Of a DNA stretch of 64,000 nucleotides, positions 21,845 through 48,431 are shown one piece after another. A program made the position numbers and the translations under genes. Source of the stretch: Auanema rhodensis (taxonomy: Eukaryota; Animalia; Nematoda); the NCBI GenBank assembly GCA_964057225.1, contig OZ059894.1, positions 15,500,001 through 15,564,000 of the forward strand, read 5' to 3'. The notes beneath the pieces are model-generated. The model was not told the origin of the DNA. It was given only the letters and a program-made list of their open reading frames with translations, and did not search any database. The number at the start of each line of letters is the position of its first letter. The first letter of the stretch is position 1.

Positions 21845-23003
21845 ATGAATCTGTTAATATTTTGTTGCCTATTCATGGGAATCAACTTATCAAATATCAA
21901 TGCGTATAATGGTCGCATAATCAGGTTTAGACAATTAGTTCAGAAGAAATCAGGTAATTCATTGATAAAAAATTTACAAATGAAAAAATGCCTCATGCTG
22001 GAATCGAACCAGCGACCTTCTGTTTACTAGACAGACGCTCTGCCCCTGAGCCAATGAGGCTTAATGCACTGTTTTTTGTTTCTATTCAAGACTCTTTCAC
22101 GTCATTTTCAGTGATCTAATTATTTTTTTCAATTTATTGACGAAAGTGAGAAGTGACCAAAATAGCAAAAATTCCCATCAGGAGACTGTAAACTGATTTC
22201 TTTCAGCTAACATTGACTGGTGCGATTACTGGTTGAAATTAGGTGTTGATCGTAAAGAATGTACCCACATGCTTCAGATGACAACTGAACCAACTACAAC
22301 AACTACAACAACTGAAGGTTTTTTCAAAGAAAACCTATTGTTTTCTTTATTCTACATGATTTTCTTATTATTCCAGCTCCGCTCTCAGTCTGTGTAAATA
22401 AATTCTCGAAGTCATCTTGTATGTCTGATAATCGATGTGAATCAGGACTTGTAGGTTTTGTTTCTGTTTTTATTCCCAAGGAAAAACATTAAAAAAAAGT
22501 TTGAAATCAACAATACGCCATAAAAAACACGCATATTCATATGTTTATTGAAAATAAAAATAAAAATAATAATTGTTTTATTCTCGCAGATTTTCATACA
22601 GTGATTTGCACAGAGTAATTCGGAAAAATTCTTGTGAATTTTGAAAACATTATTATTATACGAAATTATTTTTAGTTGTGTTCTGAAAAAAGTGGCTCTA
22701 AATGTTGTCATCCCCCACGTGGAGTGTGTCCAACTCCTGAACAAATTGGATTTACATGTGTGGTAAGTGGATGCTCGATATGAAGTTGTTCATATACATA
22801 CATACATGTATATACTTTATGCATTTCAAACAAAAAAAAAGAAGTTGAAGAAAAGAAATAGTTGTTTCAAGTTGAACGTTATGATTGAAACGAATGAATT
22901 ATAGGTTAAGCTACCAATCAGTTGGTGTGAGCATGATCGAGATTGTGGAAATAGGGATCAGAAATGTTGTCCAACAGGTTGTAACTATAATATTTGTATC
23001 TAA
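21845..23003 (+). CDS. Secreted Cys-rich protein with Thr stalk and C-terminal WAP (four-disulfide core) domain
   Basis: Signal peptide MNLLIFCCLFMG; exons join in phase to ...NIDWCDYWLKLG...TTTTTTTE...GVCPTPEQIGFTCVVKLPISWCEHDRDCGNRDQKCCPTGCNYNICI*. Confidence 0.8.
21983..21988 (-). terminator. Pol III T6 terminator of tRNA-Thr
   Basis: TTTTTT directly after the discriminator base on the minus strand. Confidence 0.8.
21989..22060 (-). tRNA. tRNA-Thr (anticodon AGT)
   Basis: GCCTCATTGGCTCAGGGGCAGAGCGTCTGTCTAGTAAACAGAAGGTCGCTGGTTCGATTCCAGCATGAGGCA: 7-bp acceptor stem, TCTGT/ACAGA anticodon stem, GTTCGA T-loop. Confidence 0.97.
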
Positions 23004-30716: not shown

Positions 30717-31043
30717 AATACAAAGTACCCAAATTTCATCAGATCATAGGACTTCTATTTCTTCAAAGATCCTCGTAACATCTGTTGCTGACGTTCCTCT
30801 GAAAATAAAAAAGAACCGACTAATGAACCAACGACAATTTGCTATAAGAATCTTATAATACTATAATATATACGTTTTCGAGTTATATACACTTACAGTA
30901 CATACTTTTCAATAAATCTGCTGTTGTTAACTTACTTTTCTTTTTATATTGTTCGAATGTAGACGACATTTCCGAAGAAGATTTACTCTAAAATAATAGT
31001 AGTTAAAACAACTAAACAAAATGTTTTTTCGCCTTTTCCAACT

Positions 31044-32432
31044 TCAAGAGAATATACAGCTGTTTTTTTCATTTCGATTAAAATTCAAAACCAAATGAAC
31101 AATATCAAGAACATGAGTACGTTTGAAGAAACCCCTGTTTTTCGTTTTAATAGTCTTAATCAGACTGGTGGACAACGAATATGCAAAAGAAAATTACCGT
31201 AGGATTCGTTAAAGAGGATGGCTTCTTCTCTTCTTGCCTATTGAGTAATATTGGTCTAGGGCTGGCGGATCTTGACTTCTAGAACAACAAATGACTGTCA
31301 ATTACCCTCAACAAAAAAAACAAAAACCGGAGATTTAGAATTACAAGTCGAACAAATAAATATCCATCTAAGATCAGCGGCCTGTTTAGGATCAATATTT
31401 GGTTGATGGCATCTATAATATCCTTTGTGCAGAGTTAACAAAAGAAAAGCAAAAAAATTGAAAATTGACGTACTTAATGTGGTAGTTTGTCTGACAAGTC
31501 TCACAACAGACAATTAAATTATTTGTAGTGCTTGCTGCTGATTCACAAACCGAACAAACCTGAAAAGGAAGCATTTAGCTCGTAGTTCTAGTACCTTTTG
31601 CAAGGAAGATCATATTCTGTTCTGAAGTAGTATTCAAGAAATTGTTAGAATTATGTTTCTTTTGGATTTATGATTTATGAAAAAATATTTTGCATGACGT
31701 GGAGGCCATTTAGAGCTTAAGAACATGGAAGAATAAATGATATGAATATTTTTGGTTTATGAACATTTCCATGGAAAAAAATTCCAACTGAAGGCGTGAG
31801 AATGGATTTTTCTTTGGGAGCCACCCAAACTTTAACAAAGTTCCTTTGTTCTTGTAGAGGAAATAATGACAAAACTACCAAAAAATCAAACACGAAAATT
31901 CAAAAACACTACATGATCATAAAGAAGTTCTTAAATAAAAAAAATCCCTCACCTTTTCAGTTTCTGAATCATCATCATCCCGCTTCTTATGAGCTCCTTC
32001 CTATAATGCGATTTTAAAAGTTCTTATAATGCTGAAGCGGACCTTTATCGGCTTAGCTAAAAATGGCAAGGGAAGCTTCTTCTTCTCCAAACCATCAGCT
32101 TTCATAAATCTCATCTTTTCAGGCTGTGTTTTCTTTTGTTGTAATGATTTTAAGGTTGATTCATTAGTTATTTCATCTCCACTATCCCAAAATTCATCTG
32201 AAGGTTGTTGTTGATTGGACTGTATCTAAAAAGAAATATAGAACTTTGTTTTCGTATTTTCTGTTTTTACCAACTTAAGTAATTCTTTGATTTGATCTAA
32301 AGCATCAGGTTCGTTAGATAAAAGTAATTTACTCAATCTCCCGTAATAATTTTCACCAAACGGACAAACGTTCTTTCTTTTTATGCCCCCGCCTGTTACC
32401 GTAAGAGGACCCGAAGATTTAGATTGTTCCAT
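31044..32432 (-). CDS. ints-12: Integrator subunit 12 (PHD finger); 3' end approximate
   Basis: Spliced PHD CSVCESAASTTNNLIVCCETCQTNYHIKCHQPNIDPKQAADLRWIFICSTC matches the INTS12-type pattern (N.LV.C..C...YH..CH.P......D.R.VW.C..C). Last exon is uncertain. Confidence 0.8.
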
Positions 32433-32678
32433 TTTTACTAAACAATTGCAATACATCGTATGAAACAATATAAAACAAATATGAAAACATGACAAACACA
32501 TCATTTTAAATAAACCATATATACCACATAGATAAAAATTTATTGATATGTGAGCAGCGTTAGGTAAACTGGAGTTCCGAATTGGTGTCTAAGTGGCAAT
32601 TGATATGGACGAGATACATTCATGGAAAAACGATAAAACAATGAAAAAATATAATACAGCTATATACTGAAGTTTCGT

Positions 32679-34717
32679 CTAATCTTCAAACTCAAGCACT
32701 GCTTTTATCTGAGTAGATTCTTCTAATACTGCTTTTTTCTGAAATATATGTGAAATGTTGTGAGATTCTTTGCGTTAGCTTACCTCGCGTTGCATCAAAC
32801 TTTTAACTTTTCTTAGAGCCGTATTCGGAGTGTTTTCTTTCAATTCAAGTACAAATTGAAGTAAGTCTTTTGGTACAGGAGATGAAGAACAAGTTCTCGA
32901 ACCGGCTGAAAAATTCATATGAATTTCTATCACAAAATTGGATCATACTCATATAGGGATGATTTAAAAGTTGATCAATGGTTGCTCGTTTTTCAACATC
33001 TCTTTCTAGACATAACTAAATGGAAGCATAATTAAATTTAGATAATTTTACAATACGTACTTTGAGAGTTTCGAGTAAATCGTCATCTTGACAATCATCA
33101 AATTGAATTTCATATGAAGTATTTGTTATAGCTGCCATCTGACAAAGTTGAATAAAATACTTAAATTTAAAAAAATTAAAAATTACTTTCATGCTCTGAT
33201 TTTTGATGTGATTGAATGGAAGAACACCATATACCATATTGTACAATATACATCCTAAGGACCAAACATCTGATTTGAGGGGCAACTAAAAGAAAATTCA
33301 TAAATATGTATATTTAACAGCAATTCGCTTAATTACTTTATACTTCGAGCGTTCTGAACATGAAAAATTCAAGGCTTCTGGAGCCATATAGCTCAGCGTT
33401 CCCATTTGATAGTCTTTTAATACTGATGTCTGAAAATGACCAAAAATTAAACTTTGCTCATAAATAAATTTAGAAGTACCTGATTTTTTGGTATAGACGA
33501 AGCAATACCAAAGTCAATAAGTTTTAAATGGCCCTTTACAAGTAAGAAGTTTGCGGGCTTCAAGTCCGAATGAACAATTTCTAAGAAATAATATCTAGAT
33601 GAATTTTTAAAAATTCACATACTTTTATCGTGGATAGCTTTCACACATTTTAGCATTTCTTTCCAATAAAACCTGATAAAAGAAGAATCTATACTTTCTT
33701 CCTTTAATCTCGATCTTAAATAAGTACTGAAATCCGTGTCACCTTTCTCTAATAAGACATAAAGTAGGTTTTCAGAATCTTTAGTCTCGCTAAAAATAGA
33801 ACAATACTGTTTTGAAGAAGTTGAAAGAAAAAACCCACTAGTCATGCATCAGTATAACGTGGCTTGTTCCTTGTAGTTCCTCCAGCAATTTAATTTCGTT
33901 TAAATATGCAATTCTTTGTTCTTCTTCCTCTCCCAAATCAACTACTTTTATGGCGTATTGTTCATGAGTATTTTCGTCCATGACATCATACACCTGAGTA
34001 CAATCAAATAAAATTTATAAAAGCAAAATATTTCTTATTACTTTACAACTACCGCCTTTTCCGAGTAACTTAATCTTGATAAATGATTTTCCTTTTATAA
34101 TAATTTTATCATGAAGAGAAGGAACAGACAGAGTTAGTTTTTGAGGGAGTGGAGAATTACTAACTTTATCCTGAAAATAAAAAACTCAACTGAATGAAGT
34201 AATATTTAAACATACACTGTCAAAATGAGCACTCTGGCTTCTCTTTCTTAAACTATTTTCTTGAACTCGTTCTTGTCTAAATTTAAAAAGACCGTCACAT
34301 GATTATTCGAAATATGATTACTTAGTCTCCCTCGAGCGTACCATTTCCATATCTCCTTCTTCGAAGCCACGGCGAGATGATGTAGGAGCTCTAGGTGGAC
34401 GTGCTACTGACGAGGAAACAACGGGAGGGGGAGGCAATATCTAGAAAACCCCAAATACGATTTTAAGCCTCAGCTAGAGCACTTACATGACTAGAATCTA
34501 GAAACTTCGTTCCAGCAGGGGCTGTTCTATTAGCATGCGATGTTGTCATAGACGTTGATGCTAAACTCCTATCAGCATTACTATCACCTGAAAAAGAAAT
34601 ATAGACTTCGTCTTAAGCTTTCTGAAACGTACTGTGCGAGGAACGATGAAGCTCTTCGAGTTGCTTACGTTTCTGTTCCTGTATTCGTTTCAGTTTATCC
34701 ACAAATGACTCTACCAT
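32679..34717 (-). CDS. TTK: Mps1/TTK dual-specificity spindle-checkpoint kinase, short N-terminus
   Basis: [106 protein letters not shown]. All are Mps1-family signatures; frame intact across the introns. Confidence 0.92.
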
Positions 34718-34905
34718 TCTACAATCAAATATTATACAATATAAAGAAATTATCAAATTAGAAAGGTAAAAAGTGTATAAACACTGTGTAGAGTACAATA
34801 TTCAAAATTTAAATATATATTTGCAACAACAAAAACAAGACATTGAAAACATAAAACGAAAGAATAACATTCTAAAAATATCTAGGACACTAAGCTAAAG
34901 TTGAA

Positions 34906-36222
34906 CTATACATATGGAGGCATATATGGATCTTCTTCTCCTTCAGCTTCTCTTAATATCTTCTCTTTGTAATCCATATATCTAAATTATACGTATATAA
35001 TGGTCAATATAAACACATGATACCTGTATTTCTTATTAAGTGGTTCAGCGCGATGTAAATGCTGAAGTAGTCTGCTCTCTACCAAATCAAGAGCTTTTCG
35101 GGAAAAAACGATTGTTTCATATTTCATAAGGGAATAACAATTAAGACCATAGACCGGCATAGCATTGAACGATGGAATGCTCTCCAGACCAGGGACTAAT
35201 CCGCCAGTTATCTGAAATAGAACTTTCCTCATAATAAAAAAAAATAGCCGGCATACTTCGTCAATATCATTTACAAACAGCACTGAATAACCCCAATTAC
35301 GTTTATCTGCTAGATCATGAAGGTATTGAGCATCTGCTTCAGGTAGATTATCCAGACTAAAAAGCAGATGTTAGATTTGGGGAAACAAGGCTTTCAAACA
35401 CAGCCAGTTGAGAAACCGTGAAAATCAAAAATGAAAAAGCAACTTTCTTATGATCTTTTCATGCCAAATTATGCTAATTGATCATAATTACAAAAAAAAT
35501 AGCAAAATAAAAAGATTATATATAAGAATCATAATTCAGAAAAAAGGTAAAATCATACCTATCAACAATTTGCAAATCATCTTGAGCATGCTTAATTGTT
35601 AAAGCTGTGCAGAGACCTATAATTCGATTAATAGTTTATAAAGAAAAAATAAAATAATACCTTGAATTCTTAAAGAATCAGGAAGCATGTAAAACCAAGT
35701 TCGTGGTCCTCTAACTCCATTAGCAAAACCACCGTGTATGAAGTTAGGAGCTCTAATTGAACCTACATGAGCTCTACCTGTCTTCTTCTGTGGCCATGGT
35801 TTCCTTCCTAAAAAATTTTATACAGTTAGCCACAAGCACACAAACTATGACACCTCCTCCAGGCATTTCAGCTCTTGTTAACTGTTTAGTTAACTGAACA
35901 TTTCGATAGTTTAGCTGCCAATTCACATTTCTATGAAGAATATCTAATCGAGGTCGAACACGAAATATGTCAGGATGAAGATCCACAAGTCCCACTTTAC
36001 GTTCATCGATGGCATCGAAAGAACACACCCACGCCTTTAATTATTAAGTTAAATAACACAAAAAAGCCTATCTACCTGAGGAGTCTCAATAAATGGATTC
36101 TCGGGTTTTCGCCATAAATCTCTTTTGGTATCTTTCAAAGCGCTTAACCTTTCCTCAGTGGCAGTGTTAATTGTGCGTATAGAAGTGCGAAAAAGTGAGT
36201 CTATAAGATTTCGGCCTAACAT
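34906..36222 (-). CDS. mrpl-4: Mitochondrial ribosomal protein L4
   Basis: LHPDIFRVRPRLDILHRNVNWQ...[29 protein letters not shown]...GPR...ALTIKHAQDDL...RNWGYSVLFV. Confidence 0.93.
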
Positions 36223-36388
36223 CCCTATAATAGCACATATGTTTCAAGAAATAGAAACAAAAAAAAGAGTATTCAACAGAAAAAACTGTGTTTTGAATAA
36301 ATTATATTATACAAAAATTTGTTATGTATCCTAAACTCTATAACAATAAACATTTAACAACAACATAAAAACTTGGATATAATACACT

Positions 36389-37706
36389 CTATTCAGATTG
36401 TTGGCGTGCTTGTTGTCCTCTAACTATAGCTTCTTTGAATAACCTGAAAACAAAAAAAGTAACAATTGTAGAGAACAAAATTCAAACCTTAACAAAAATC
36501 CAACGCTTTCTGGAGAATCATCGTTGGAAGGGATCAGGTACGTAAGATAGGATGGATCAGCATTGGTATCCACTACTCCAACTGTTGGAATAGCCATTTT
36601 AGCAGCTTCTTAACATATACATAACCGTGATTTTTTTCCGTAAAAAATTTAAAAAAACCTATGATGGCAGGATGAGAAGAGCCCAGTGAAGTAAGAGTAG
36701 ACATGAATACTATTGTATCAGGAAGTCTTACTGTAGAGCCCAAAAGTTGTTTTGTATTAGTTAAAGTTCCTTGTTGCCATTTACGTGTATGAGAGTATTG
36801 TCCAACCTATAATCCAACATATAGTAAATAAAAAAAACAAAAAAAACCTCCTCAGCAACTCGTTCTACATCAAACATCGTAGCACGATTACTGGTAACGA
36901 ACAAGATGATGCCTCCTCTCATGGCGACATGAGCGACAAAGTTTAAAGCCCTGAATATGAGCAAATCAATTATTGGAAAATATGAATTATAAATTATTTT
37001 GACAAATGTGGTGCATATAGTTCTTTATATAGCTCAGTATCGCTTTTTTCAACACGACATAAGATAACTATAGTTTCTTATAATCTGTTCAAAGTGTAAG
37101 GCATCACAGCTACATATCTTAGACATATAAAGGATTTGAACTCATAACTGTCCTTCTTTCATTGAACCACTACCGTTATACTATGTGTTAGCATGTTTAT
37201 TATATTGACAAACCTAGTTAAATATTTCTTCGTAATTTCTAGATCGAAAATGCAAACTTCCAATCGTTCTCCATATAAAGCCCATTTCATGTTATCATTC
37301 AGAGTTCCAATCTGGAAACAAATGAGAAAAGGAACACAAATATATAAACCTTATGGCCATAATGTAAACGGGCATTGAACATATCCTCGATTGTAAATAG
37401 ATTGTCTAGACCAAACTTGTCTTCTTCCCTGTGTACCGGTGAGATATATTCTCTGAGAAAAAGCATATAGAATTCAATAATATAAATATTAACTAACTTC
37501 AAAACCACTGGCTGTACTGAGGCTTTAATCAAGGTATCTCTATCAGGAACAGATTTAGTGTTGTAATCCATCTATATTTTTAAATTAATGTGATTTATTT
37601 GAAAGTTTGATACCTCATGTGAGCTAGATAGGGAAGAGCTCTGACGAAGGCCACGCAATCGGTATGGAGCAAGAGTCCTAGGTAATGACACAGCCAGCCG
37701 TTTCAT
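36389..37706 (-). CDS. mrps-2: Mitochondrial ribosomal protein S2
   Basis: [17 protein letters not shown]...[18 protein letters not shown]...GTLTN...RLPD...[19 protein letters not shown]...IPSNDDS. Confidence 0.93.
37004..37142 (-). ncRNA. Candidate intronic box H/ACA snoRNA in the oversized mrps-2 intron
   Basis: Hairpin GTTCAAA...TTTGAAC, H box AGATTA, hairpin TATAGTT...AACTATA with upper stem TGTCGT/GCGATA, then ACA plus 3 nt. About 139 nt, ending ~50 nt before the 3' splice site, same strand as the host. Confidence 0.5.
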
Positions 37707-37970: not shown

Positions 37971-40920
37971 CTATGACAATCTCAAAATAGGGAAGCAAGA
38001 ATCTTCGGACATTATCCAATCAGCTTTCTTATTATCCATCTTTCCACTTAAAAGCAACCGTAAAACAACAATGTTGTTTTTACAAAGCATTTCTAACGAT
38101 CTGAATGTATAAATAGTTAAATAAGTTAATTCTCAAAGAGAATTTAAATCACTCACTCAGCTTCCCGAATCATTTCACTACGTTCTATTAATCTATGAAA
38201 ATGTGTTTTTGCTAATTCAAAAGATTCAATGGCTTGTTTGAACATATCTTTAGGATCGTTTTGGAGATTTTCACAATATCTGTAGGGATAAATTACAATC
38301 TTTTACTCGGATCTTCAACCTACTTGCTAACATTTAAATATTGATAATAATTCAAATGTAAAGGAGGACCAAGATTGGCAAATGGAGCCATACGATGTTC
38401 GAAATGTAAGCGATCGGTGTTTGGTTCCCATCGAGGTACCTAAATAGAAAATTAATTGAAGGTACAAGATAATTTTAAGAAACCTTAATTTTCCCCCATT
38501 TTGTGAGACCTATTGTAGCTTTGAAAATTCCTGTAGCCAAAGCTCCTTCACCTATTAATTTTATTTTTTGATCGTGATAATGCTCAATTCTATAAATAAA
38601 GGAATAGAAGAAAGTTGACAAGTTAATTTTCTACCGCTGTTTAATATCCTCCTCAATCTTAACTCTACGAGCGTTTTTCTTTTTATTCTTAGTTGACGCA
38701 TTTTTCTCAATTTCTACTTTATAATCATAATAAGTAACTTCCAAAATTCGTTCTACAGAATTTAAATGCCACCTGCATAAGATTTCTCCAAAATACCTTT
38801 AATGAGAATTTCAAAAAGTTAAAAGATTATTATAAATTACCAATAATAATGGGCATATTCGTAAGGCGCAAACAAATCAAGTTTAAAACTTAATTCCATG
38901 TGATAGTGGATAATATTAACTAAGTGGTTAAACACAAATCCTAGAAGAGGATGTTGAGGATGCCCTTCTAAAAAGGAACAATCATTATGTAAGCCTTGAA
39001 GTTTGCGACAAACCTATCTCACAACCACTCATTAACATATTACATCTTCTATCTAAGTGTTCAGCAAGACCTTGGGTCACAATAAGATCCTCGATTGATG
39101 CCGCCAACTTTTCTCGCTGTCTGGCCAGGTTCATTCCTGCAAGAATATCTTTGGTTCATCTTTCATAGGCATTTAACAAACCAAAGTTGGCAACCATCGT
39201 TAAGGTGGCCTTTGTTATCTCATCTAGAAAATCAGCATATATATTACGACATTCTTCGTCATTATTCGCAGGAGAACTGAAACAGGATTTATACAATGGT
39301 TTAGCTTTATAAATGAACTTACCCCTCTTCTAAAACTACGTGACGTATAACTTTCCGAACAGAGGTATCTATGAGTGTTAAAAGAGATGTAGAGCCAAGA
39401 ACTAATTCGTCATGAGGGAACATTGTGAACTAAAATAAGTAATTTTTTTCTATTATTTATAAAATTGTCTACTTGTAAAACAGATCGTGTAAACACACAA
39501 CTATTATCCATACTGAAATCTTTAAAAAACTTTAAAAGTTTGGAGAAGTCGCTCGCAGCTTCATCACTTTCATCGGCGATTCGGTATAATCTGAAAAACA
39601 TTCATAAACACAAAAAACAATATTATTGATTTACCTGCATGATAATGAATTCAAGAATGCCATACTATAATTACGAGATTGAATAATGGTTCTCCGAGGA
39701 AATGATCCCGTTAAGTATTGCTTGTTATAGTCTGGTTGAAAAACTCCTAACCATTCAAACTTACCTAAAATACATAAGAAATACAAATTAAATAATTAAA
39801 ATGATAAGATACCATCTTCCTCAAAACTAACAGGAGCTTCTAGACCAAGCTTATAGGTTTCTATAAATGTAGCGGATATATTTTTCATGTTTTGAGCTAT
39901 AGTCGCTGCAGTGTCAAGACAAGGTCTACAAATTAGATAGAAAAAAAATATATAAAAAGAGTAACAAAAAAGATAAATAAAGCATACTTGAAAACATTAG
40001 CATTTGACTCGTCTTTGGTTCGTAAAGGTATCACAGATGTTAAAAATTCAACTAATAAACGGATCCATTGGAAACGAGAAGCAATAGCATTTGATACTTC
40101 CGTGTTAGTATTCTGCTAGAATATTACACAAAGTGAAAGAAAAAAACTATCTAACTTACTTTTGAGAGTGATTCCTCAATTTCTTTCATTTTATCAAGGC
40201 AGTCCGTGACAACACCCTCAGTTGGTACAACATAAGGAATAGAAATATTAAAATCTTCCTTCAAAATAAACGAAAAATAAAAAAAAAGGTTAGAATAAAA
40301 AGTACTGACCTCTTCGAATACCATAACATTATGAATAACAGTACGAATAATTGGAACCAAAAAACTGAATATTTGGGCAAGAGTAGAAAGAATAGAGTGA
40401 TCAAAGGAATAAGGTTCACTCAAAAGCACATTAGAATATAACTTGAAATTTGAAAAGATAAGAAAAGACAAAAAAATCAATTGCATACCGTATTGGCAAC
40501 ATTGCCACCTTCAAGATATGAAACAAAACAAGATAAAGTTGCATCGATAATTGTTAAAACTTCTCTATCGTTAACTGTATCAAAATACTCCTAAAGAAAT
40601 TGAAAAAATATAACTACAATATATAAAAGTAATACCAGAGATTTGAGCTGTTCAACACCCGATTTTCTGATGTATCGCTCCATACCAATATCCATTTTTG
40701 GATCCATAAGCTGCACTGCTCCCATGGCATCGTGTAACCGAAAACCATCTGTGAATACAACTTCACCTAACTTCAGTTCTACAATAGTAGTTGTTTGGTT
40801 ATAAAGACTGTACAGATTACCTTCACATGCACGGAAAAAATCATCTTTGATATCTATTCCCTTCACCTTCTCCGATACATGTGTTTTAGCCAGTAACTCC
40901 CTTAGTTCAGGTGAGGACAT
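37971..40920 (-). CDS. natc-1: NatC auxiliary subunit NAA35/Mak10
   Basis: DIKDDFFRACEELKLGEVVFTDGFRLHDAMGAVQLMDPKMD...SYLEGGNVANT...EEDF...FKDFSMDNSCVFTRSVLQ...NLARQRE...GISFKLDLFAPYEY...YWYFGE...FEHRMAPF. Confidence 0.92.
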
Positions 40921-41985: not shown

Positions 41986-43677
41986 CTACAATTCAAAATC
42001 ACTGTTCAGACAGACTATCAGAGTGAAAGTTCAAGAAGTAAAAAAAAATGAACAGAGATAAGTTTCACAGATGATTATGAAGATCAAGTACAAAAGAAAA
42101 GTGTTTAAACACTGGAAATCAAAGTAACTTAACATAAGCATAGGAAAGGGATTAAGGATGAAAAATTATGAAAAAATGAACAAAACTACATTATGATACG
42201 AGAATGGGAGTTTTAAGTTAAGTTTCTGAATTTTAATTTTAAATTTAGTAAATTATGCGAAACAATAATTAACTATAATTCTATTATTTTCAAAAAACGC
42301 TATTGAGACTGGGCGCATCGTGCGTTAAATACAACACGCCTTGTAAACAACGTGCAGTAATGCAAGCCAAGAGTAGCAGATGCAGATGCATATGCTGACC
42401 TGTAGTTATGAGCTAAGCTTACTTTGACTTGGTTAGTAACGGTTGCCCTTTTTCTTTATGCGTAACTATCACTGTAATTTCCTGTGAATGAAAGTTTGAA
42501 AACTTTAATGATATCATATCATACTGATAAAAAATATAAATTTGTGTTTTCAACGGAATACTGTTCAATGAATTTATCACTACTTTTTATATTCAAAGCA
42601 ATCGTTTTCCTTTAACTATCGTATATATATATTATATATATTGAATAGAATACAGAATTAAGATATGAAGTTTCATATTTTGTGTATTATTTGAATACTC
42701 AAAATCAGTGTTTTAATTTTTAAAGCAATTCAAATGCTTATTATTGTAATCCAGAAAATTAATGAAAAATATGGCGGAATTAATAATCAACATAATCGAC
42801 TACATTGTTGTTTCTTTGAGCACATCAACAGATTTAATAAATTCACATGTTTATCTCTGAATATGCGGAACCAATGGATAATCTGTCAAGTTTTTTTATT
42901 TGAAGATGAAAATAAATGTAGCGAAGATTTGTTTGAGGGAACACAATGTCTGTTTAATCTTAAAAGCGTATTTTTAACAAGAGTTTCTATATATCTCTTG
43001 ATCAACCGATCTGCTCGCTGTGAAGATAAGAAATATATCATCAGAGTTCACGTGGAATATGAGTAGGCATATAATTGTTATTTGAAAGAATATTATAATA
43101 TTCATAACAAGAAAATCCAAAAATATATGTCAGTTTCTGCTAATTTTCTTAACAATGGTTACCTCAATTGTAGTTGTATCTTTGTTTTGAACAAGTTTTT
43201 CAATAAAAGCTTGTGAATACTATGAAAAAGATATAATCTGATATACGTAACTAGACTTTCCATGACAAGAAAGAACCTTACTTGGTTCTATAGATGGGAA
43301 ACTTCAGTCATTAAGCTTGCTGGCAGTAAAGCGCTGTGACTCCGCCTATTCACACTGAAGGCTCGCCGGACCAAGGGCGTGGATTAAAATTGCTTCGCCC
43401 TTAGTCTAGTCTTTCTTGTCGTTACCGTCATCAGGACATTTCAGTCTTTCGGTTATCTTGCCCTCACTGCTTGTTTTAATCATCAAAGCATCATCTTTCT
43501 CTGCTCTGCCAGAGCTGCTCCTCTTCAAAAGAGGAGGTCTGTTTTCAGTGGTCTAGGTTGTCTATCACCTCTGCCTTCAACAGTGAGCTTGTATTCTGGA
43601 ACATCAGAGAGGTTCTTCCTCTTACTCCTCCGAAACATATTCTCGTATCCCTTTCCATCGTTTCATCACCTTCACCA

Positions 43678-44876
43678 ATGAGCAGTCTCACTCAAGTGAT
43701 CCTTCCCCTTCTTCTGTTTGCAATGTAAGTTTTACACTGTGTCATTACCACTTGAAATTACTAATCACAAAAGTTCTAACTAATGTTTGATTATTAAATT
43801 CCATGTTTTATTATGATGACAGCAATTTGATTTTGATATTTCTGTGAATTTGATAACAAAAGAAGAATATTTATTCCTTAACTATTCAAACATATGAAAA
43901 CAATAATATAATAAGAATTATTGTAATTTTAATGAAATCAAAATTATATTTTAGTTATTTAGTATCAATGACTACCAATGAAAAACCATTTCACAAGTTT
44001 TTAGTTTATTTTCTTGTCATTATGCTGAAACTAAAGCGTGCTTTCGTTATATTTACATAAGAAAGATGATGACAGTAGAAGTTACTGTTGTTCTTTTTCA
44101 AAAATTTTCTTTCCTGTCAATTCCAGGATGAACTTTTGAGAGTATTTGTAATAGAATATTATTTAGTTTTCGCTACTTAGGAAAAGATTTAGGATACAAA
44201 AAAACATGGCAAACAAGCATAGTTGTTATAGATTTCAAGCTATGAAAACCTTTTTTTTTTTCAGAATCTCAAGTAATTATGCAAAACCTCCGAAAAATTT
44301 ATCTCGTCTTCGTAATAAGGGTAGCTTGAGGAATGAAGGTTCTATTATGAGCAGTTATTCTATGGTGAATAATGGGCAACAAATCACGGTTTTTGAGGTT
44401 TGAAAGCTTCTCTCTTTTCAACTTTTACCTCCTTCCAACTGGGAACTGAATGATGTACACAGATTGTTTTGGGATGATTCTTTTTCTATTTTCTAAAAAA
44501 AAAGTTCTTCAGAAGTGTCTTCTCTTTACCTTAACTTAAACCAAGTTTTTGCGTAATAGTCTTGTCATATGATTTCCAATTCACATCTTCTTACTAATTA
44601 TCATAAGTCCATTGGAGTTAAATCCACAATCCATTCAACTTCGATTAAATAATCTCCACCCTGTTTCAACTTTAAACTTAATAGTAAAACTTGTACTAAT
44701 GATAGAAAAATCGTTAGCTACTATGATGGAAAGATGAGCAAAGATGCTTGAACATCTTGCATCATGAGTTGGTATCATTAGTTGCACGCACGTTTCCTCA
44801 GATTTCATGTGGCTCACAGGCCGAATTTCGGATTGCCAATAGCCAATTATCTATTTTTGAAGCTTATAAAAGATAA

Positions 44877-44918
<42 letters not shown>

Positions 44919-47900
44919 AATAATTATTCAAAACCATTCAAACATTTATAGTTTATACTTTCCCAATATATTTGAAGGCATAGTTCAACCTGAGTTACAA
45001 GGCAAGAATAAAGTTTGAGCAAAAAAAAGAAGACGTCCTATATTAGAGAGCAAAAGTTTTTATTATTCTGAATAGCTTTGTAATAATCAATCTTTTCAAA
45101 AAAAAAATTGTTTTTAGTGTGAGAGGCGATAAGTACCTTTGTTAAAAATTCAGCAGAGCATACAACAAGTAGACAAACCAATTAAGAATTCTTCAAATCA
45201 TATACCCGGAAATCCCAATGTTTTTCAGCAATGTTAAAACTTCAGCATTTTCTTTTCTTGACCTACTCATTGAAATGCTGAATATTCTTGATATCTAGAT
45301 GTAAAGAAGAACCGATGCTCCGTATTTATAGAAAGAATGATATAGAGAGAGAGAGGCTTGGAAGAGAAGGAATATGAAAGAATGAAAGGATATTTCTAAT
45401 ATTTATTTTGCCATCATCAATATCGCTAGTATCAGTCTCAGAATGACGGAGTCATCGCCGTCAGAGACATTGGTGGCGACCGCAAGAACGACCATGACGT
45501 CGGTGAGTATCAATTCATTCAGAAGACAAGAGCCTTTAACAACAGAATGTACATAATACATATGTATTAACGTAAGAAGGAAATTCATCTTTTAACACAT
45601 TTTGTTTCGTTTTTCTTCACTTTCGTCTATGAATTAGATAGAAGCTCACAATGATGTTAGAACTGTTGGAAATATATGAAAGTCTTTTTAAGAGTTTTCC
45701 TAAGATTCATTTCTTTATGTATATTTAGGTCTATTAACTTTTCAAAGGTTATATCTTAGTTGTTCTCAAAATTTTCCCAGGAAATCACCAAGTTTGGCTA
45801 AAAAATTAGCATTTAGGATGGATTAGATGATGAGAAAAATGGAACTGCAGCAGGACAGCAGCCTTCAGATACCATGGCAAACGCAGAGACGACAGAAAAT
45901 ATAGATCCGGATGATCTCGACGACATTCTGGCCGCAGCTGAATTTGAGTCTATGGAGTAAGTCTTCATATACAAAACGATGAAGATCTGGAATTCAACTA
46001 CTTTTATTTGGGAAATTTCCCATAAAACTTTGAAAAGCATTCAAAAATTCAAAAATGATGTGAAATTTCAAAAACTAAGAAGCTTTAAAATTCAAAAAAG
46101 TATATTTGGAAACGTTACAGGCTCCCAGAAACAACTACAGAAACTACAACAACGAGAAGGATCACAACAACAGCGGAAATAGCTCGTGTTAGAATGTCTG
46201 TAAGTATTAAACTGATCATGTACTTAAATGACAACCTTAATTACTTCTTCAAGGTCCACACGCCAATAGCTCAACCTCAGTCATCAGACACAGAGATTTT
46301 AGAGCGATTACTTAGCAAGGGATACGATTGGAGAGTTCGACCCCCTGGTCAAGATGGTGAGTATACTACGTGCATTTCTAAATTTCAAGGTTGTTTGATG
46401 CTCTGTAGGAACCTTTTTTCTTCAAAGTTTTGAGAATGTTGAAACAAAATGAGCAACGGGTTATTATAATTTTCTAATTTTGGGATGCACTTTACACTTT
46501 TATGTGTTCAGCCTCACTTGAGTAGACTCTTCAAAAGAATTTAGAATAAGTTGGAACCTAAATGAAAAGCTTTGATTTTCAAAATTTTTCTTTTGAATAT
46601 TTCAGGAACTTTACACGGTGGACCAGTAGTAGTTTCTGTTAACATGCTCATTCGAAGGTAGGGAATCAGTATATTTGTCTTCAACACTTTTACTTTAGTA
46701 TATCGAAAATCGATAATGTTAATATGGAATATAGTGTACAGTTAACATTTCGAGAAAGTTGGAAAGATATTCGACTTCAGTAAGATATTAAAGAAAATAT
46801 CCTTTAATATTAATAATTAATAATAATAATTAGATATGAAAAAGATGATAATGGCAATGTGAAGGATAATGTTCCTGATTTTCTTATTTTGACTGCTGGA
46901 CAGCAAATCTGGATGCCTGATTCTTTTTTCCAAGTAAGCCATACTATCATTTGAATTTTATCAAATATGTTGATTATAGAATGAGAAACAAGCTTATAAG
47001 CATATGATTGATAAGCCAAATGTTCTTATTAGAGTTCATAAAAATGGAGAAATTCTATATTCAGTTCGTATTTCTCTTGTTTTATCATGTCCAATGCATC
47101 TTCAGGTTCGGTTATATTATTTAAATACATACATTGTTTTTGCTTAAACATTTAAAAGAAAAATAAGCAAAGCATATCTGAGAGTTTGCTCAGCTTTTTA
47201 CATGTTTTTCTTCCTAAAGCAACAGATTGAGTTAGAAAATCTTTGTTTTCAGTTTTATCCTATGGATGTTCAGAAATGTTTAATAGATTTAGCTTCATAT
47301 GCCTATACTACAAAAGATATTGGTATGTTTTCGACACTTCTTGCAAATAACATTGCAATTCGATAAAATTATGAAATAAACTTTCATGTATTCAGAATAT
47401 GTTTGGAAAAGTGAAGAACCAGTGCAGCTTAAGAAGGGTTTAAGCTCATCTTTGCCATCATTTCAACTTCGAAATGTTTCTACTGGATACTGCACAAGTA
47501 ATACAAATACAGGTGCTTATTCATGTCTTCGAACTACATTGGAACTCAGGCGACAATTCAGGTAATTATAATTTCAAATATGATTTGAATAGTAGAATAA
47601 GATAATTTATTATTAATTTTTAGTTACTATTTACTACAATTATATATTCCATCTTGTATGCTTGTAATTGTATCTTGGGTTTCATTTTGGATTGACCGAA
47701 ATGCTGTTCCTGCTCGGGTTACTTTGGGAGTTACAACATTACTAACAATGACTACTCAAGTAAGTACATGAGATTGTCAAGCATGTCTAGTTTTTATTAT
47801 TTAGTCTTCTGGTATTAATGCAAAATTACCACCAGTAGCTTATATAAAAGCTATTGATGTTTGGATAGGAGGTAACTATTTACAAAAAAAATCAACAAAA

Positions 47901-48431
47901 TAATACAAGTGCTTCAGCTTGTATGACTTTTATCTTTGGTGCTTTATTGGAATTTGCTTGGGTAACTTACATAGCTAATCGAATTGATGGAGCAAGAAGT
48001 ATTCATAGAATATTCATTTTATTAAATAAAATATGTTTGTTAAGAAAAAGAAGCGGAGAAAATGGCTTTACTCGCTAAGAATCAAGATGTGTGGGTTCCA
48101 AGAGATGTGGCAGAGCAAGAACGCGAAGTTGATAAAGCTTTACGGGCAGCGAATAACAGAAAATATCGGAGAAGTGCTTTCACAAGGTATAACTCTCAAA
48201 ACATATAGTTAAGTAGCTTCAATATTCTAGGTTTATTGAAAGACACACTGAATGGCATGATCCACCAAAACGAGCAGATCTTCTGTCAAGTAAGTTTTTC
48301 TAAAATTTACAAAGAAAAAGTGAAAGAAATCTTTTTTAGGAATTCTGTTTCCGTTATCGTTTTTATCATTTAACATAGCATATTGGATGCATTATGCTCA
48401 ATACAAACAATATGAATCAACTCGAACTTAA
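43678..48431 (+). CDS. avr-15: Glutamate-gated chloride channel alpha subunit, long N-terminal form
   Basis: Signal peptide; [10 protein letters not shown]; [24 protein letters not shown]; Cys-loop [16 protein letters not shown]; [17 protein letters not shown]; DVWIGAC; [13 protein letters not shown] loop as recalled for AVR-15. N-terminal exon joins are less certain. Confidence 0.88.
44881..44910. repeat. (TA)15 microsatellite in an avr-15 intron
   Basis: Perfect TA run. Confidence 0.9.

What the first reader, a model, noticed from the sequence alone, without database searches (positions are those of the whole stretch)
32679..34717. Intact Mps1/TTK checkpoint kinase in a nematode, at the operon slot that is empty in C. 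elegans
Seen: a complete spliced kinase with Mps1-specific motifs ([47 protein letters not shown]), lying ~190 nt after mrpl-4 and ~250 nt before ints-12. Established: C. elegans and many nematodes lack Mps1, and PLK-1 substitutes in KNL-1 phosphorylation. Recalled, unverified: C. elegans has natc-1, mrps-2, mrpl-4 and ints-12 adjacent (T23B12.4 to T23B12.1) with no kinase between them. Inference: this is the ancestral locus from which Mps1 was deleted, and this species may run an Mps1-dependent checkpoint on presumably holocentric chromosomes.
Basis: partly seen in the sequence, partly recalled or inferred. Interest (0 to 1): 0.85.

Follow-up and report, generated by a model that had tools for sequence, protein, structure and literature searches.

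The report
Expressed Mps1/TTK kinase gene in a rhabditid nematode
This is a real, expressed Mps1/TTK spindle-checkpoint kinase gene lying between mrpl-4 and a PHD-finger gene, a slot that is empty in C. elegans, but the same kinase is present and already annotated in most other nematode groups, so it is a useful confirmation and not a surprise.

Summary
A 14-exon, 478-aa kinase gene lies on the minus strand at 32679-34717. It has 13 GT-AG introns of 42-51 nt. Spliced transcript contigs from four public runs skip nine of the predicted introns exactly; six further joints were not displayed.

It is an Mps1/TTK orthologue. Human TTK is the best solved-structure match for four kinase-domain exons taken separately and ties with CDK7 on a fifth. 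A profile of nematode orthologues scores TTK at 370-386 bits against 137 for the next family. In a tree it falls inside a nematode clade nested in animal TTKs. Against the Auanema sp. JU1783 orthologue, pN/pS is 0.14.

The neighbours are natc-1, mrps-2, mrpl-4, kinase and a PHD gene. Auanema and Ancylostoma show the same order, and Pristionchus has the first four. In C. elegans, C. remanei and C. bovis, mrpl-4 is followed directly by the PHD gene (161-245 bp spacer), with no kinase remnant.

Two corrections apply:
- Mps1 orthologues occur in at least 27 nematode genera, and several are already named Ttk.
- Diploscapter also has the empty slot but keeps a divergent Mps1 elsewhere. The slot may therefore have been vacated by relocation before the Caenorhabditis loss.

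Checkpoint function, operon status and holocentricity are inferred, not shown. The scan has no earlier Mps1 note.

The parts
32679..34717 (-). Mps1/TTK orthologue, CDS from ATG to TAG. It has 14 exons and encodes 478 aa. Exons (high to low): 34717-34633, 34587-34487, 34440-34322, 34276-34216, 34170-34042, 33993-33839, 33789-33623, 33580-33480, 33429-33337, 33285-33187, 33138-33061, 33015-32949, 32905-32784, 32738-32679.
   Evidence: The model was built, and all 13 introns are GT-AG and 42-51 nt long. Nine junctions are seen exactly in spliced contigs of four runs. The protein scores 533 bits over its full length against a profile of 11 nematode orthologues.
32949..34170 (-). Exons 5-12, which encode the protein kinase domain (about residues 148-420). 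It contains the GKGGS loop, the AIK lysine, the NEI glutamate, [12 protein letters not shown], the TSV...GTLSYMAPE activation and P+1 loop, and [10 protein letters not shown].
   Evidence: Per-exon PDB searches put human TTK first. Exon 7 and exon 9 hit no other kinase at E<=1 and E<=10 respectively. Exon 8 scores 38.5 bits against 22.9 for the next kinase, and exon 10 scores 35 against 25. Pfam Pkinase matches come, and the alignment.
34216..34717 (-). Exons 1-4, which encode a short N-terminal region of about 122 residues. It carries a conserved basic helix ([16 protein letters not shown]) and an N(K/R)TAP motif. There is no TPR domain.
   Evidence: The alignment with 11 nematode orthologues is. 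Pfam finds only a kinase domain in nematode orthologues, while fish, bivalve and sea urchin TTKs show weak N-terminal Mad3_BUB1_I hits.
32679..32905 (-). Exons 13-14, which encode a C-terminal tail. It carries a nematode-conserved motif ([17 protein letters not shown]) and a terminal L-E-F-E-D.
   Evidence: The alignment is. The profile alignment to the long human TTK constructs runs to profile position 502.
34719..34720 (-). AG acceptor lying 1 nt upstream of the ATG. It is the likely trans-splice site.
   Evidence: The kinase contigs of all four runs end at 34720 at their 5' end, which follows from the depth arithmetic on bin 34693-34839. Their 3' ends differ (32428-32532). No spliced-leader letters were recovered, so this is inferred.
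32428..32678 (-). 3' UTR of the kinase mRNA, 147-251 nt long in the assemblies. In run X1 it reaches past the start of the next gene.
   Evidence: Table 8 shows contig 3' ends at 32428, 32470, 32493 and 32532. The PHD-gene contig starts at 32439.
34909..36222 (-). mrpl-4 (mitochondrial ribosomal protein uL4m), the gene immediately upstream. Its stop lies about 192 nt before the kinase ATG.
   Evidence: Pfam Ribosomal_L4. tblastn with Auanema uL4m P0266 covers 36222-34909. Spliced contigs lie on it and the 3' UTR reaches 34804.
36389..37706 (-). mrps-2 (mitochondrial ribosomal protein uS2m). The boundaries are approximate and read from ORFs.
   Evidence: Pfam Ribosomal_S2, frame reading, and tblastn matches to the S2 genes of seven other nematode loci.
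37971..40920 (-). natc-1 (NAA35/Mak10 auxiliary subunit of NatC). The boundaries are approximate.
   Evidence: Pfam Mak10 and TPR_NAA35 on its ORFs, frame reading, and matches to the Mak10 genes of other loci.
30770..32432 (-). It lies immediately downstream, with its ATG at 32432, 246 nt after the kinase stop. The 3' boundary is approximate.
   Evidence: Pfam PHD at 31413-31574. Its first exon is 83% identical to that of the PHD gene downstream of the Auanema kinase and 52% to that of Ancylostoma. A spliced contig starts at 32439, on an AG acceptor.

Best explanation
The gene is the orthologue of the Mps1/TTK dual-specificity kinase in a rhabditid (clade V) nematode. The nearest sampled relative at this locus is Auanema sp. 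JU1783.

Shown:
- It is intact and spliced as modelled.
- It is present as mRNA.
- It carries every catalytic and activation-loop motif of Mps1.
- It is under strong purifying selection.

It is the fourth gene of a same-strand cluster: natc-1, mrps-2, mrpl-4, mps1 and a PHD gene, with spacers of about 166-264 nt. This order is ancestral for at least the rhabditid, strongylid and diplogastrid part of Nematoda.

Inferred:
- The cluster is an operon whose downstream genes are trans-spliced at AG acceptors 1-5 nt before their ATGs.
- The kinase does what Mps1 does elsewhere: it phosphorylates KNL-1 motifs at unattached kinetochores to recruit BUB-1/BUB-3 and start the spindle checkpoint.

Like all nematode Mps1 proteins sampled, it is a short form without the N-terminal TPR domain. 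Any kinetochore targeting must therefore use the short conserved N-terminal helix or the C-terminal tail.

In Caenorhabditis the slot is empty and no orthologue was returned. In Diploscapter the slot is also empty, but a fast-evolving copy sits elsewhere. The most economical history is relocation out of the cluster in their common ancestor, followed by loss in Caenorhabditis (about 50% likely).
For: Gene model and splicing:
- All 13 introns are GT-AG and 42-51 nt long.
- Nine junctions are reproduced exactly by contigs of four runs, and contig length fits the whole model.

Family:
- Human TTK is the top solved-structure match for exons 7-10 taken separately and ties with CDK7 on exon 6. Exons 7 and 9 hit no other kinase.
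- A profile of 11 nematode orthologues scores TTK at 370-386 bits, against PAK2 137, ULK3 136, PLK3 133 and TLK2 124.
- The window protein scores 533 bits over the full length of that profile.
- Searching with the Ancylostoma orthologue returns nematode proteins first, then named TTK/Mps1 of ticks, spiders, molluscs, echinoderms and fish.
- In the tree, all Mps1-like rows form one clade (99/90*). The nematode rows form one clade (94/87) nested in animal TTKs, and its internal order follows nematode phylogeny.

Constraint:
- The window protein is 83% identical in amino acids to the Auanema orthologue over 445 codons.
- Exon sizes match for the fully aligned exons.
- pN is 0.114, pS is 0.84 (saturated), and pN/pS is 0.14.

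Synteny:
- Auanema L006 and Ancylostoma L001 have the same five-gene order.
- Pristionchus L002 has the first four genes.
- Public gene models that fuse Ribosomal_L4 or Ribosomal_S2 with the kinase (P0156, P0162, P0046) show the same adjacency.
- C. elegans L008, C. remanei L005 and C. bovis L007 lack the kinase, with no tblastn remnant at E<=10.
- Diploscapter has an empty slot and a copy beside a CDT1_C gene.

Trans-splicing hint:
- All four kinase contigs end at 34720, on the AG acceptor.
- The PHD-gene contig of run X1 starts at 32439, also on an AG.
Against: - No functional data exist. Kinetochore localisation, KNL-1 phosphorylation and a checkpoint role are inferred from orthology alone.
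- The protein lacks the TPR domain that helps target vertebrate Mps1, so its targeting could differ.
- No spliced-leader letters were seen, and the runs are only guessed to be RNA by the tool. The exact intron skipping is what argues that they are RNA.
- The outgroups in the tree are unnamed kinases on long branches. Separation from named families therefore rests mainly on the PDB searches.
- The relocation-then-loss history rests on one Diploscapter assembly and on the sister relationship of Diploscapter and Caenorhabditis, which I take from established phylogeny and did not test here.
- Absence from Caenorhabditis genome-wide rests on the literature and on no Caenorhabditis protein appearing in the top 120. 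It does not rest on a genome search.
Confidence: 0.85

Rival explanations
1. Mps1 was deleted in place, from between mrpl-4 and the PHD gene, on the Caenorhabditis branch. The Diploscapter relocation is then a separate event.
For: The Caenorhabditis spacers of 161-245 bp look like ordinary intercistronic spacers with no scar. Relocation out of the cluster also happened independently in Mesorhabditis, so such moves are not rare.
Against: Diploscapter shares the empty slot. In-place deletion therefore needs two independent emptyings in sister lineages, where relocation in the common ancestor needs one.
Confidence: 0.3
2. The gene is Mps1 by descent but no longer acts in the spindle checkpoint. 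A short, TPR-less kinase might have been kept for a meiotic, centrosomal or other role, with PLK-1 already doing the KNL-1 job across rhabditids.
For: All sampled nematode orthologues lack the TPR domain. Caenorhabditis manages without the kinase, according to Espeut et al. 2015, which I know only through citing papers. The relocated copies in Diploscapter and Mesorhabditis sit on long branches (1.01 and 1.39), which suggests weakened constraint in some lineages.
Against: The catalytic core and the activation and P+1 loops are nearly invariant across nematodes. pN/pS is 0.14. A tick protein named Mps1 also shows no TPR hit, so a missing TPR does not by itself argue against checkpoint function.
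Confidence: 0.12
3. The gene is not Mps1. It would be a member of another kinase family (PLK, TLK, ULK or CAMKK) with convergent motifs.
For: None was found beyond the general similarity of all protein kinases. Exon 6 alone ties TTK with CDK7 at 15 bits.
Against: There is a gap of about 240 bits between TTK and every other solved kinase. TTK comes first for exons 7-10. The protein is nested inside animal TTKs in the tree.
Confidence: 0.02
4. The gene is a decaying or silent copy, or an assembly or contamination artefact.
For: None.
Against: The reading frame is intact through 14 exons. Spliced transcripts are found in four runs. Selection is purifying. The window is collinear with an Auanema contig from 26518 to 47978.
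Confidence: 0.01

Closest known systems
Human TTK/Mps1 (solved kinase domains such as 3cek, 2zmc, 5ntt)
   Same: The kinase domain is the same type, including the HSD variant of the catalytic loop (HSDLKPANF), DFGIA, a Thr/Ser cluster in the activation loop, GT..YM.PE in the P+1 loop and [13 protein letters not shown] is the best match for four of the five exons tested and for the family profile.
   Different: The window protein has 478 aa, against about 790-890 aa for the fish and sea urchin TTKs returned here. It has no N-terminal TPR domain, only about 140 residues before the kinase domain.
Annotated nematode Mps1 orthologues: Auanema sp. JU1783 (487-aa unnamed product), Ancylostoma duodenale Aduo_017513, a Haemonchus contortus protein, and Toxocara canis and Dirofilaria immitis 'Dual specificity protein kinase Ttk'
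   Same: The architecture is the same over the full length, including the conserved N-terminal helix, the N(K/R)TAP motif and the C-terminal TP.T motif. In Auanema and Ancylostoma the neighbours are the same.
   Different: Identity is 83% to Auanema over aligned codons and 42-47% to strongylid, filarial and ascarid proteins. The KEN sequence found in the N-terminus of most of these proteins reads NAD in the window protein.
C. elegans natc-1 / mrps-2 / mrpl-4 / T23B12.1 cluster on chromosome V
   Same: The flanking genes, their strand and their order are the same.
   Different: There is no kinase. mrpl-4 and the PHD gene are 220 bp apart and no remnant is detectable. According to cited work (Espeut et al. 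2015, seen only through citations), PLK-1 phosphorylates KNL-1 in its place.
Diploscapter pachys Mps1-like protein WR25_21876 (P0241)
   Same: It falls in the same nematode Mps1 clade and aligns over its full length.
   Different: It lies at another locus, beside a CDT1_C gene, while the ancestral slot is empty. It sits on a long branch, has HAD in place of HSD, and has lost the activation-loop TSV.

Membership tests
Mps1/TTK protein kinase family | The kinase domain is closer to Mps1/TTK than to any other kinase family. | tested here: met
   TTK is the top PDB match for exons 7-10 by wide margins and ties with CDK7 on exon 6. The nematode profile scores TTK at 370-386 bits against 137 or less for PAK, ULK, PLK and TLK. 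The window protein scores 533 bits against that profile.
Mps1/TTK protein kinase family | The protein falls inside the Mps1 clade in a phylogeny. | tested here: met
   The Mps1-like rows form one clade at 99/90*. The nematode clade (94/87) is nested among named animal TTK/Mps1 proteins. A caveat is that the outgroups are unnamed kinases on long branches.
Mps1/TTK protein kinase family | The catalytic residues are intact, including the family's HSDLKPAN catalytic loop, the beta3 Lys, the alphaC Glu and DFG. | tested here: met
   The protein sequence and the alignment show [20 protein letters not shown] and DFG all present.
Mps1/TTK protein kinase family | The activation-loop Thr/Ser autophosphorylation cluster and the P+1 loop threonine are present (T-T/S-V ... 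G-T..YM.PE). | tested here: met
   The sequence reads [21 protein letters not shown]. Exon 9, which carries it, matches no kinase other than TTK at E<=10; the only other hits are two weak reductoisomerase chains. This is a test at motif level, and phosphorylation itself was not tested.
Mps1/TTK protein kinase family | An N-terminal TPR domain is present, as in vertebrate Mps1. This feature is not universal in the family. | tested here: not met
   Only about 140 residues precede the kinase domain. Five nematode orthologues show no TPR hit, whereas fish, bivalve and sea urchin TTKs show weak Mad3_BUB1_I hits. A tick protein named Mps1 also lacks the hit.
Mps1/TTK protein kinase family | The protein localises to kinetochores and is required for the spindle assembly checkpoint. 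| not testable with these tools
   This needs tagging and a knockout or inhibitor assay in the worm.
Nematode operon (SL2-type polycistron) | The genes lie on the same strand with intercistronic distances of roughly 100-400 nt. | tested here: met
   The spacers are about 264, 166, 192 and 246 nt between natc-1, mrps-2, mrpl-4, the kinase and the PHD gene.
Nematode operon (SL2-type polycistron) | The downstream genes are trans-spliced to a spliced leader. | tested here: inconclusive
   The contig 5' ends coincide with AG acceptors at 34720 (four runs) and 32439 (run X1). No leader letters were recovered, because contigs cannot show them.
Nematode operon (SL2-type polycistron) | A polycistronic precursor spans the genes. 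| tested here: inconclusive
   In run X1 the kinase contig reaches 32428, 12 nt past the start of the PHD-gene contig. This is suggestive only.

The most novel reading that the evidence does not exclude
Loss of Mps1 in Caenorhabditis was a two-step process. First the gene left its ancestral operon slot in the common ancestor of Caenorhabditis and the Diploscapter/Protorhabditis group, and began to evolve fast, as in the Diploscapter copy with HAD and a degraded activation loop. The relocated copy was then lost on the Caenorhabditis stem once PLK-1 had taken over KNL-1 phosphorylation. Rhabditids such as Auanema, which still have the constrained in-operon copy, would then be the closest culturable relatives in which the handover from Mps1 to PLK-1 can be tested directly.
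Probability: 0.4. Interest if true: 0.45.

Novelty: new member of a known kind. Interest (0 to 1): 0.3.

Why it matters
The C. elegans checkpoint is a textbook case of a pathway rewired after the loss of Mps1. This locus gives three things:
- a direct genomic picture of that loss: the same four flanking genes, with the kinase present in Auanema-type rhabditids, strongylids and Pristionchus and cleanly absent in three Caenorhabditis species;
- a correction of scope: the loss is narrow, because Mps1 orthologues were returned from at least 27 nematode genera, and the literature read here reports absence only for C. elegans (PMC10996584) and Trichinella (PMC5015942);
- a hint from Diploscapter that leaving the operon preceded the loss.

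It also flags a close, free-living relative of C. elegans in which the division of labour between Mps1 and PLK-1 could be tested. None of this changes what is known about Mps1 itself.

Tried and rejected
- Whole-protein database searches with the window's own spliced protein were not possible. It has no reference, and long sequences may not be typed, so I searched single exons by reference and ran the whole protein only in local scripts.
- The window's own protein did not appear as a 100% match in the representative library.
- The main paper on Mps1 loss in nematodes (Espeut et al. 2015) and Desjardins et al. 2013 are not held. What they say about which nematodes lack Mps1 is known to me only through citing papers and memory.
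- Paper searches for the C. elegans operon annotation of T23B12 and natc-1 gave nothing useful.
- An attempt to enumerate the exact Auanema gene model from GT-AG paths gave over a million valid paths. I used per-exon codon alignments instead. Exon 14 found no match there.
- The Rfam scan of the window found only one tRNA and no SL RNA gene.
- Rejected readings: another kinase family, a pseudogene, contamination.
Full report
**Observation.** The minus strand between 34717 and 32679 carries a clean gene model of 14 exons. It has 13 GT-AG introns of 42-51 nt, a 1437-nt reading frame and a 478-aa product. All four quoted motifs are in the translated product.

The upstream neighbour is mrpl-4. Pfam finds Ribosomal_L4 on it, and tblastn with Auanema uL4m covers 36222-34909. 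Its stop lies about 192 nt before the kinase ATG. The downstream neighbour is a PHD-finger gene whose ATG at 32432 lies 246 nt after the kinase stop. Further upstream lie a Ribosomal_S2 gene and a Mak10/NAA35 gene. All five genes are on the minus strand.

**Expression.** One search found four runs from a single study that hold about half of the sampled words of the stretch. That share is what spliced RNA would give. When laid on 31900-36300, each run has a contig of 1589-1691 nt that skips the predicted introns at the exact predicted bases. Nine kinase junctions are listed, all CT..AC on the plus strand, and six further joints were not displayed. The longest contig is 1691 nt, which equals the 1437-nt CDS plus 251 nt of 3' UTR plus 3 nt.

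The tool only guesses that these runs are RNA. Exact removal of every displayed intron is the argument that they are. So the gene is transcribed and spliced as modelled.

The depth figures for bin 34693-34839 show that all four kinase contigs stop at 34720, the AG acceptor 1 nt before the ATG. Their 3' ends vary between 32428 and 32532. The PHD-gene contig of run X1 starts at 32439, also an AG acceptor, 5 nt before its ATG. This is what trans-spliced downstream operon genes would look like in an assembly. No leader letters were seen, however, so trans-splicing remains inferred.

**Family.** The spliced protein has no reference, so I searched its exons one by one.
- In the solved-structure sequences, exon 7 hits only TTK among all chains at E<=1. 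Exon 9 hits no other kinase at E<=10.
- Exon 8 scores 38.5 bits on TTK against 22.9 for the next kinase.
- Exon 10 scores 35 against 25.
- Exon 6 ties TTK with CDK7 at 15 bits.

A library-wide search with exon 8 returned full-length relatives. By local BLAST the window protein aligns over nearly its whole length at 42-47% identity to strongylid, filarial and ascarid proteins.

A search with the Ancylostoma orthologue returned nematode proteins first, and then proteins named TTK or Mps1 from ticks, spiders, molluscs, echinoderms and a fish. No other kinase family appeared in the top 120.

A profile of 11 nematode orthologues scores human TTK at 370-386 bits. The next families reach only 124-137 bits: PAK2 137, ULK3 136, PLK3 133 and TLK2 124. 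The window protein scores 533 bits along the whole of that profile.

In a maximum-likelihood tree of 50 kinase domains, all Mps1-like rows form one clade (99/90*). The 27 nematode rows, the window and one unnamed row form one clade (94/87) nested among animal TTKs next to arthropods. Inside it the order is Plectus, then spirurids, then clades IV and V, as in the species tree. The outgroups are unnamed HRD kinases on long branches, so the PDB result is the stronger test against named families.

**Constraint.** The window is collinear with a contig of Auanema sp. JU1783 from 47978 down to 26518, at 66-80% nucleotide identity. Thirteen of the 14 kinase exons map one to one, and the eight fully aligned exons (6-13) have identical lengths. 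Over 445 aligned codons, amino-acid identity is 83%. pN is 0.114, pS is 0.84 (saturated), and pN/pS is 0.14. The gene is therefore under strong purifying selection.

**Architecture.** Only about 140 residues precede the kinase domain. Nematode orthologues from five genera show nothing but a kinase domain in Pfam. Fish, bivalve and sea urchin TTKs give weak N-terminal Mad3_BUB1_I (TPR) hits, and a tick protein named Mps1 gives none. Nematode Mps1 is thus a short, TPR-less form. Conserved across nematodes are a basic N-terminal helix, an N(K/R)TAP motif, a C-terminal E-L-x-N-x-T-P-x-T motif and a terminal L-D/E-F.

**Synteny.** The order Mak10, Ribosomal_S2, Ribosomal_L4, kinase, PHD is found in Auanema sp. 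JU1783 and Ancylostoma duodenale. Pristionchus pacificus has the first four genes. Public gene models that fuse Ribosomal_L4 or S2 domains with the kinase show the same adjacency in further strongylids and in Heterorhabditis.

C. elegans MRPL-4 was identified in the cluster of the C. remanei protein. Its locus on chromosome V reads Mak10, S2, L4, PHD, with 220 bp between mrpl-4 and the PHD gene. C. remanei (245 bp) and C. bovis (161 bp) show the same order. The window kinase finds nothing in these loci even at E<=10.

In Brugia the kinase lies in another context. In Steinernema hermaphroditum the locus tags of the two genes are far apart. The arrangement is therefore not shown outside clade V.

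**Two corrections.**

First, Mps1 is not rare in nematodes. One search lists orthologues from Plectus, Enterobius, Parascaris, Toxocara, Thelazia, five filarial genera, Steinernema, Panagrellus, Panagrolaimus, Bursaphelenchus, Aphelenchoides, Ditylenchus, Globodera, Pristionchus, Mesorhabditis, Diploscapter, Heterorhabditis and eight strongylid genera. Several are already named Ttk/TTK. In the literature I could read, absence is stated for C. elegans (PMC10996584) and for all Trichinella taxa (PMC5015942). The key paper, Espeut et al. 2015, is not held.

Second, Diploscapter pachys has the cluster with no kinase between L4 and PHD. I take its placement in the sister group of Caenorhabditis from established phylogeny. 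The PHD first exon actually starts near L009:12168. The Diploscapter Mps1-like gene sits beside a CDT1_C gene on another contig. It is on a long branch, with HAD instead of HSD and a degraded activation loop. Mesorhabditis spiculigera also has its copy elsewhere, likewise on a long branch.

The simplest history is that the gene left the slot before the split of Diploscapter and Caenorhabditis, and the relocated copy was then lost in Caenorhabditis. In-place deletion in Caenorhabditis plus an independent move in Diploscapter is the rival.

**Mechanism.** Shown: an intact, expressed and constrained kinase gene with every catalytic and activation-loop feature of Mps1, in a conserved same-strand cluster. 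Inferred: co-transcription as an operon with trans-splicing, and the canonical role of phosphorylating KNL-1 to recruit BUB-1/BUB-3 at unattached kinetochores.

**Verdict.** The finding is a new member of a known kind. The closest relative's orthologue is already deposited as an unnamed product, many nematode orthologues are annotated, and the loss in C. elegans is well known. What adds some value is the explicit view of the slot, filled or empty, across eight rhabditid, strongylid and diplogastrid genomes, together with the Diploscapter hint of relocation before loss.

Noticed in passing
L009:10001-14515 and L003:10001-13524 (Diploscapter pachys): Diploscapter has the natc-1/mrps-2/mrpl-4/PHD cluster without the kinase. 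Its Mps1-like gene lies beside a CDT1_C gene on another contig. That copy is on a long branch, with HAD instead of HSD and without the activation-loop TSV.
   Followed up: partly
L010:10001-12349 (Mesorhabditis spiculigera): The Mesorhabditis Mps1 orthologue is also outside the mrpl-4 cluster, between a Zip transporter gene and an F-box gene. It has the longest branch among the nematode rows (1.39).
   Followed up: no
P0156, P0162, P0046 (public protein models): Several deposited gene models fuse Ribosomal_L4, and in one case also Ribosomal_S2, with the kinase into a single protein. These are probably annotation artefacts caused by the tight spacing of the cluster.
   Followed up: no
window 34587-34487 (exon 2; protein residues about 29-40): Most nematode Mps1 proteins carry a KEN sequence in the N-terminal region (GNKEN or GDKEN), which could be an APC/C degron. 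The window protein reads SNADRS at that position, and Toxocara and Mesorhabditis also lack KEN.
   Followed up: no
window 35357-35558: mrpl-4 has one intron of 202 nt, while its other listed introns are 41-46 nt and all the kinase introns are 42-51 nt. I did not look at what the long intron contains.
   Followed up: no
window 32428-32439: In run X1 the kinase transcript contig extends 12 nt past the 5' end of the PHD-gene contig. The kinase 3' UTR therefore overlaps the next gene's acceptor and start codon, or a read-through precursor was assembled.
   Followed up: partly
window 26518-47978: This stretch of more than 21 kb is collinear, in reverse orientation, with Auanema sp. JU1783 contig CALQYR020007214.1 at 66-80% nucleotide identity. 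It includes a Cys-loop ligand-gated channel gene (Neur_chan domains) at window about 43600-47980.
   Followed up: partly
window 21989-22060: A single tRNA gene on the minus strand was the only Rfam match in the window (69 bits). No SL RNA gene was found.
   Followed up: no
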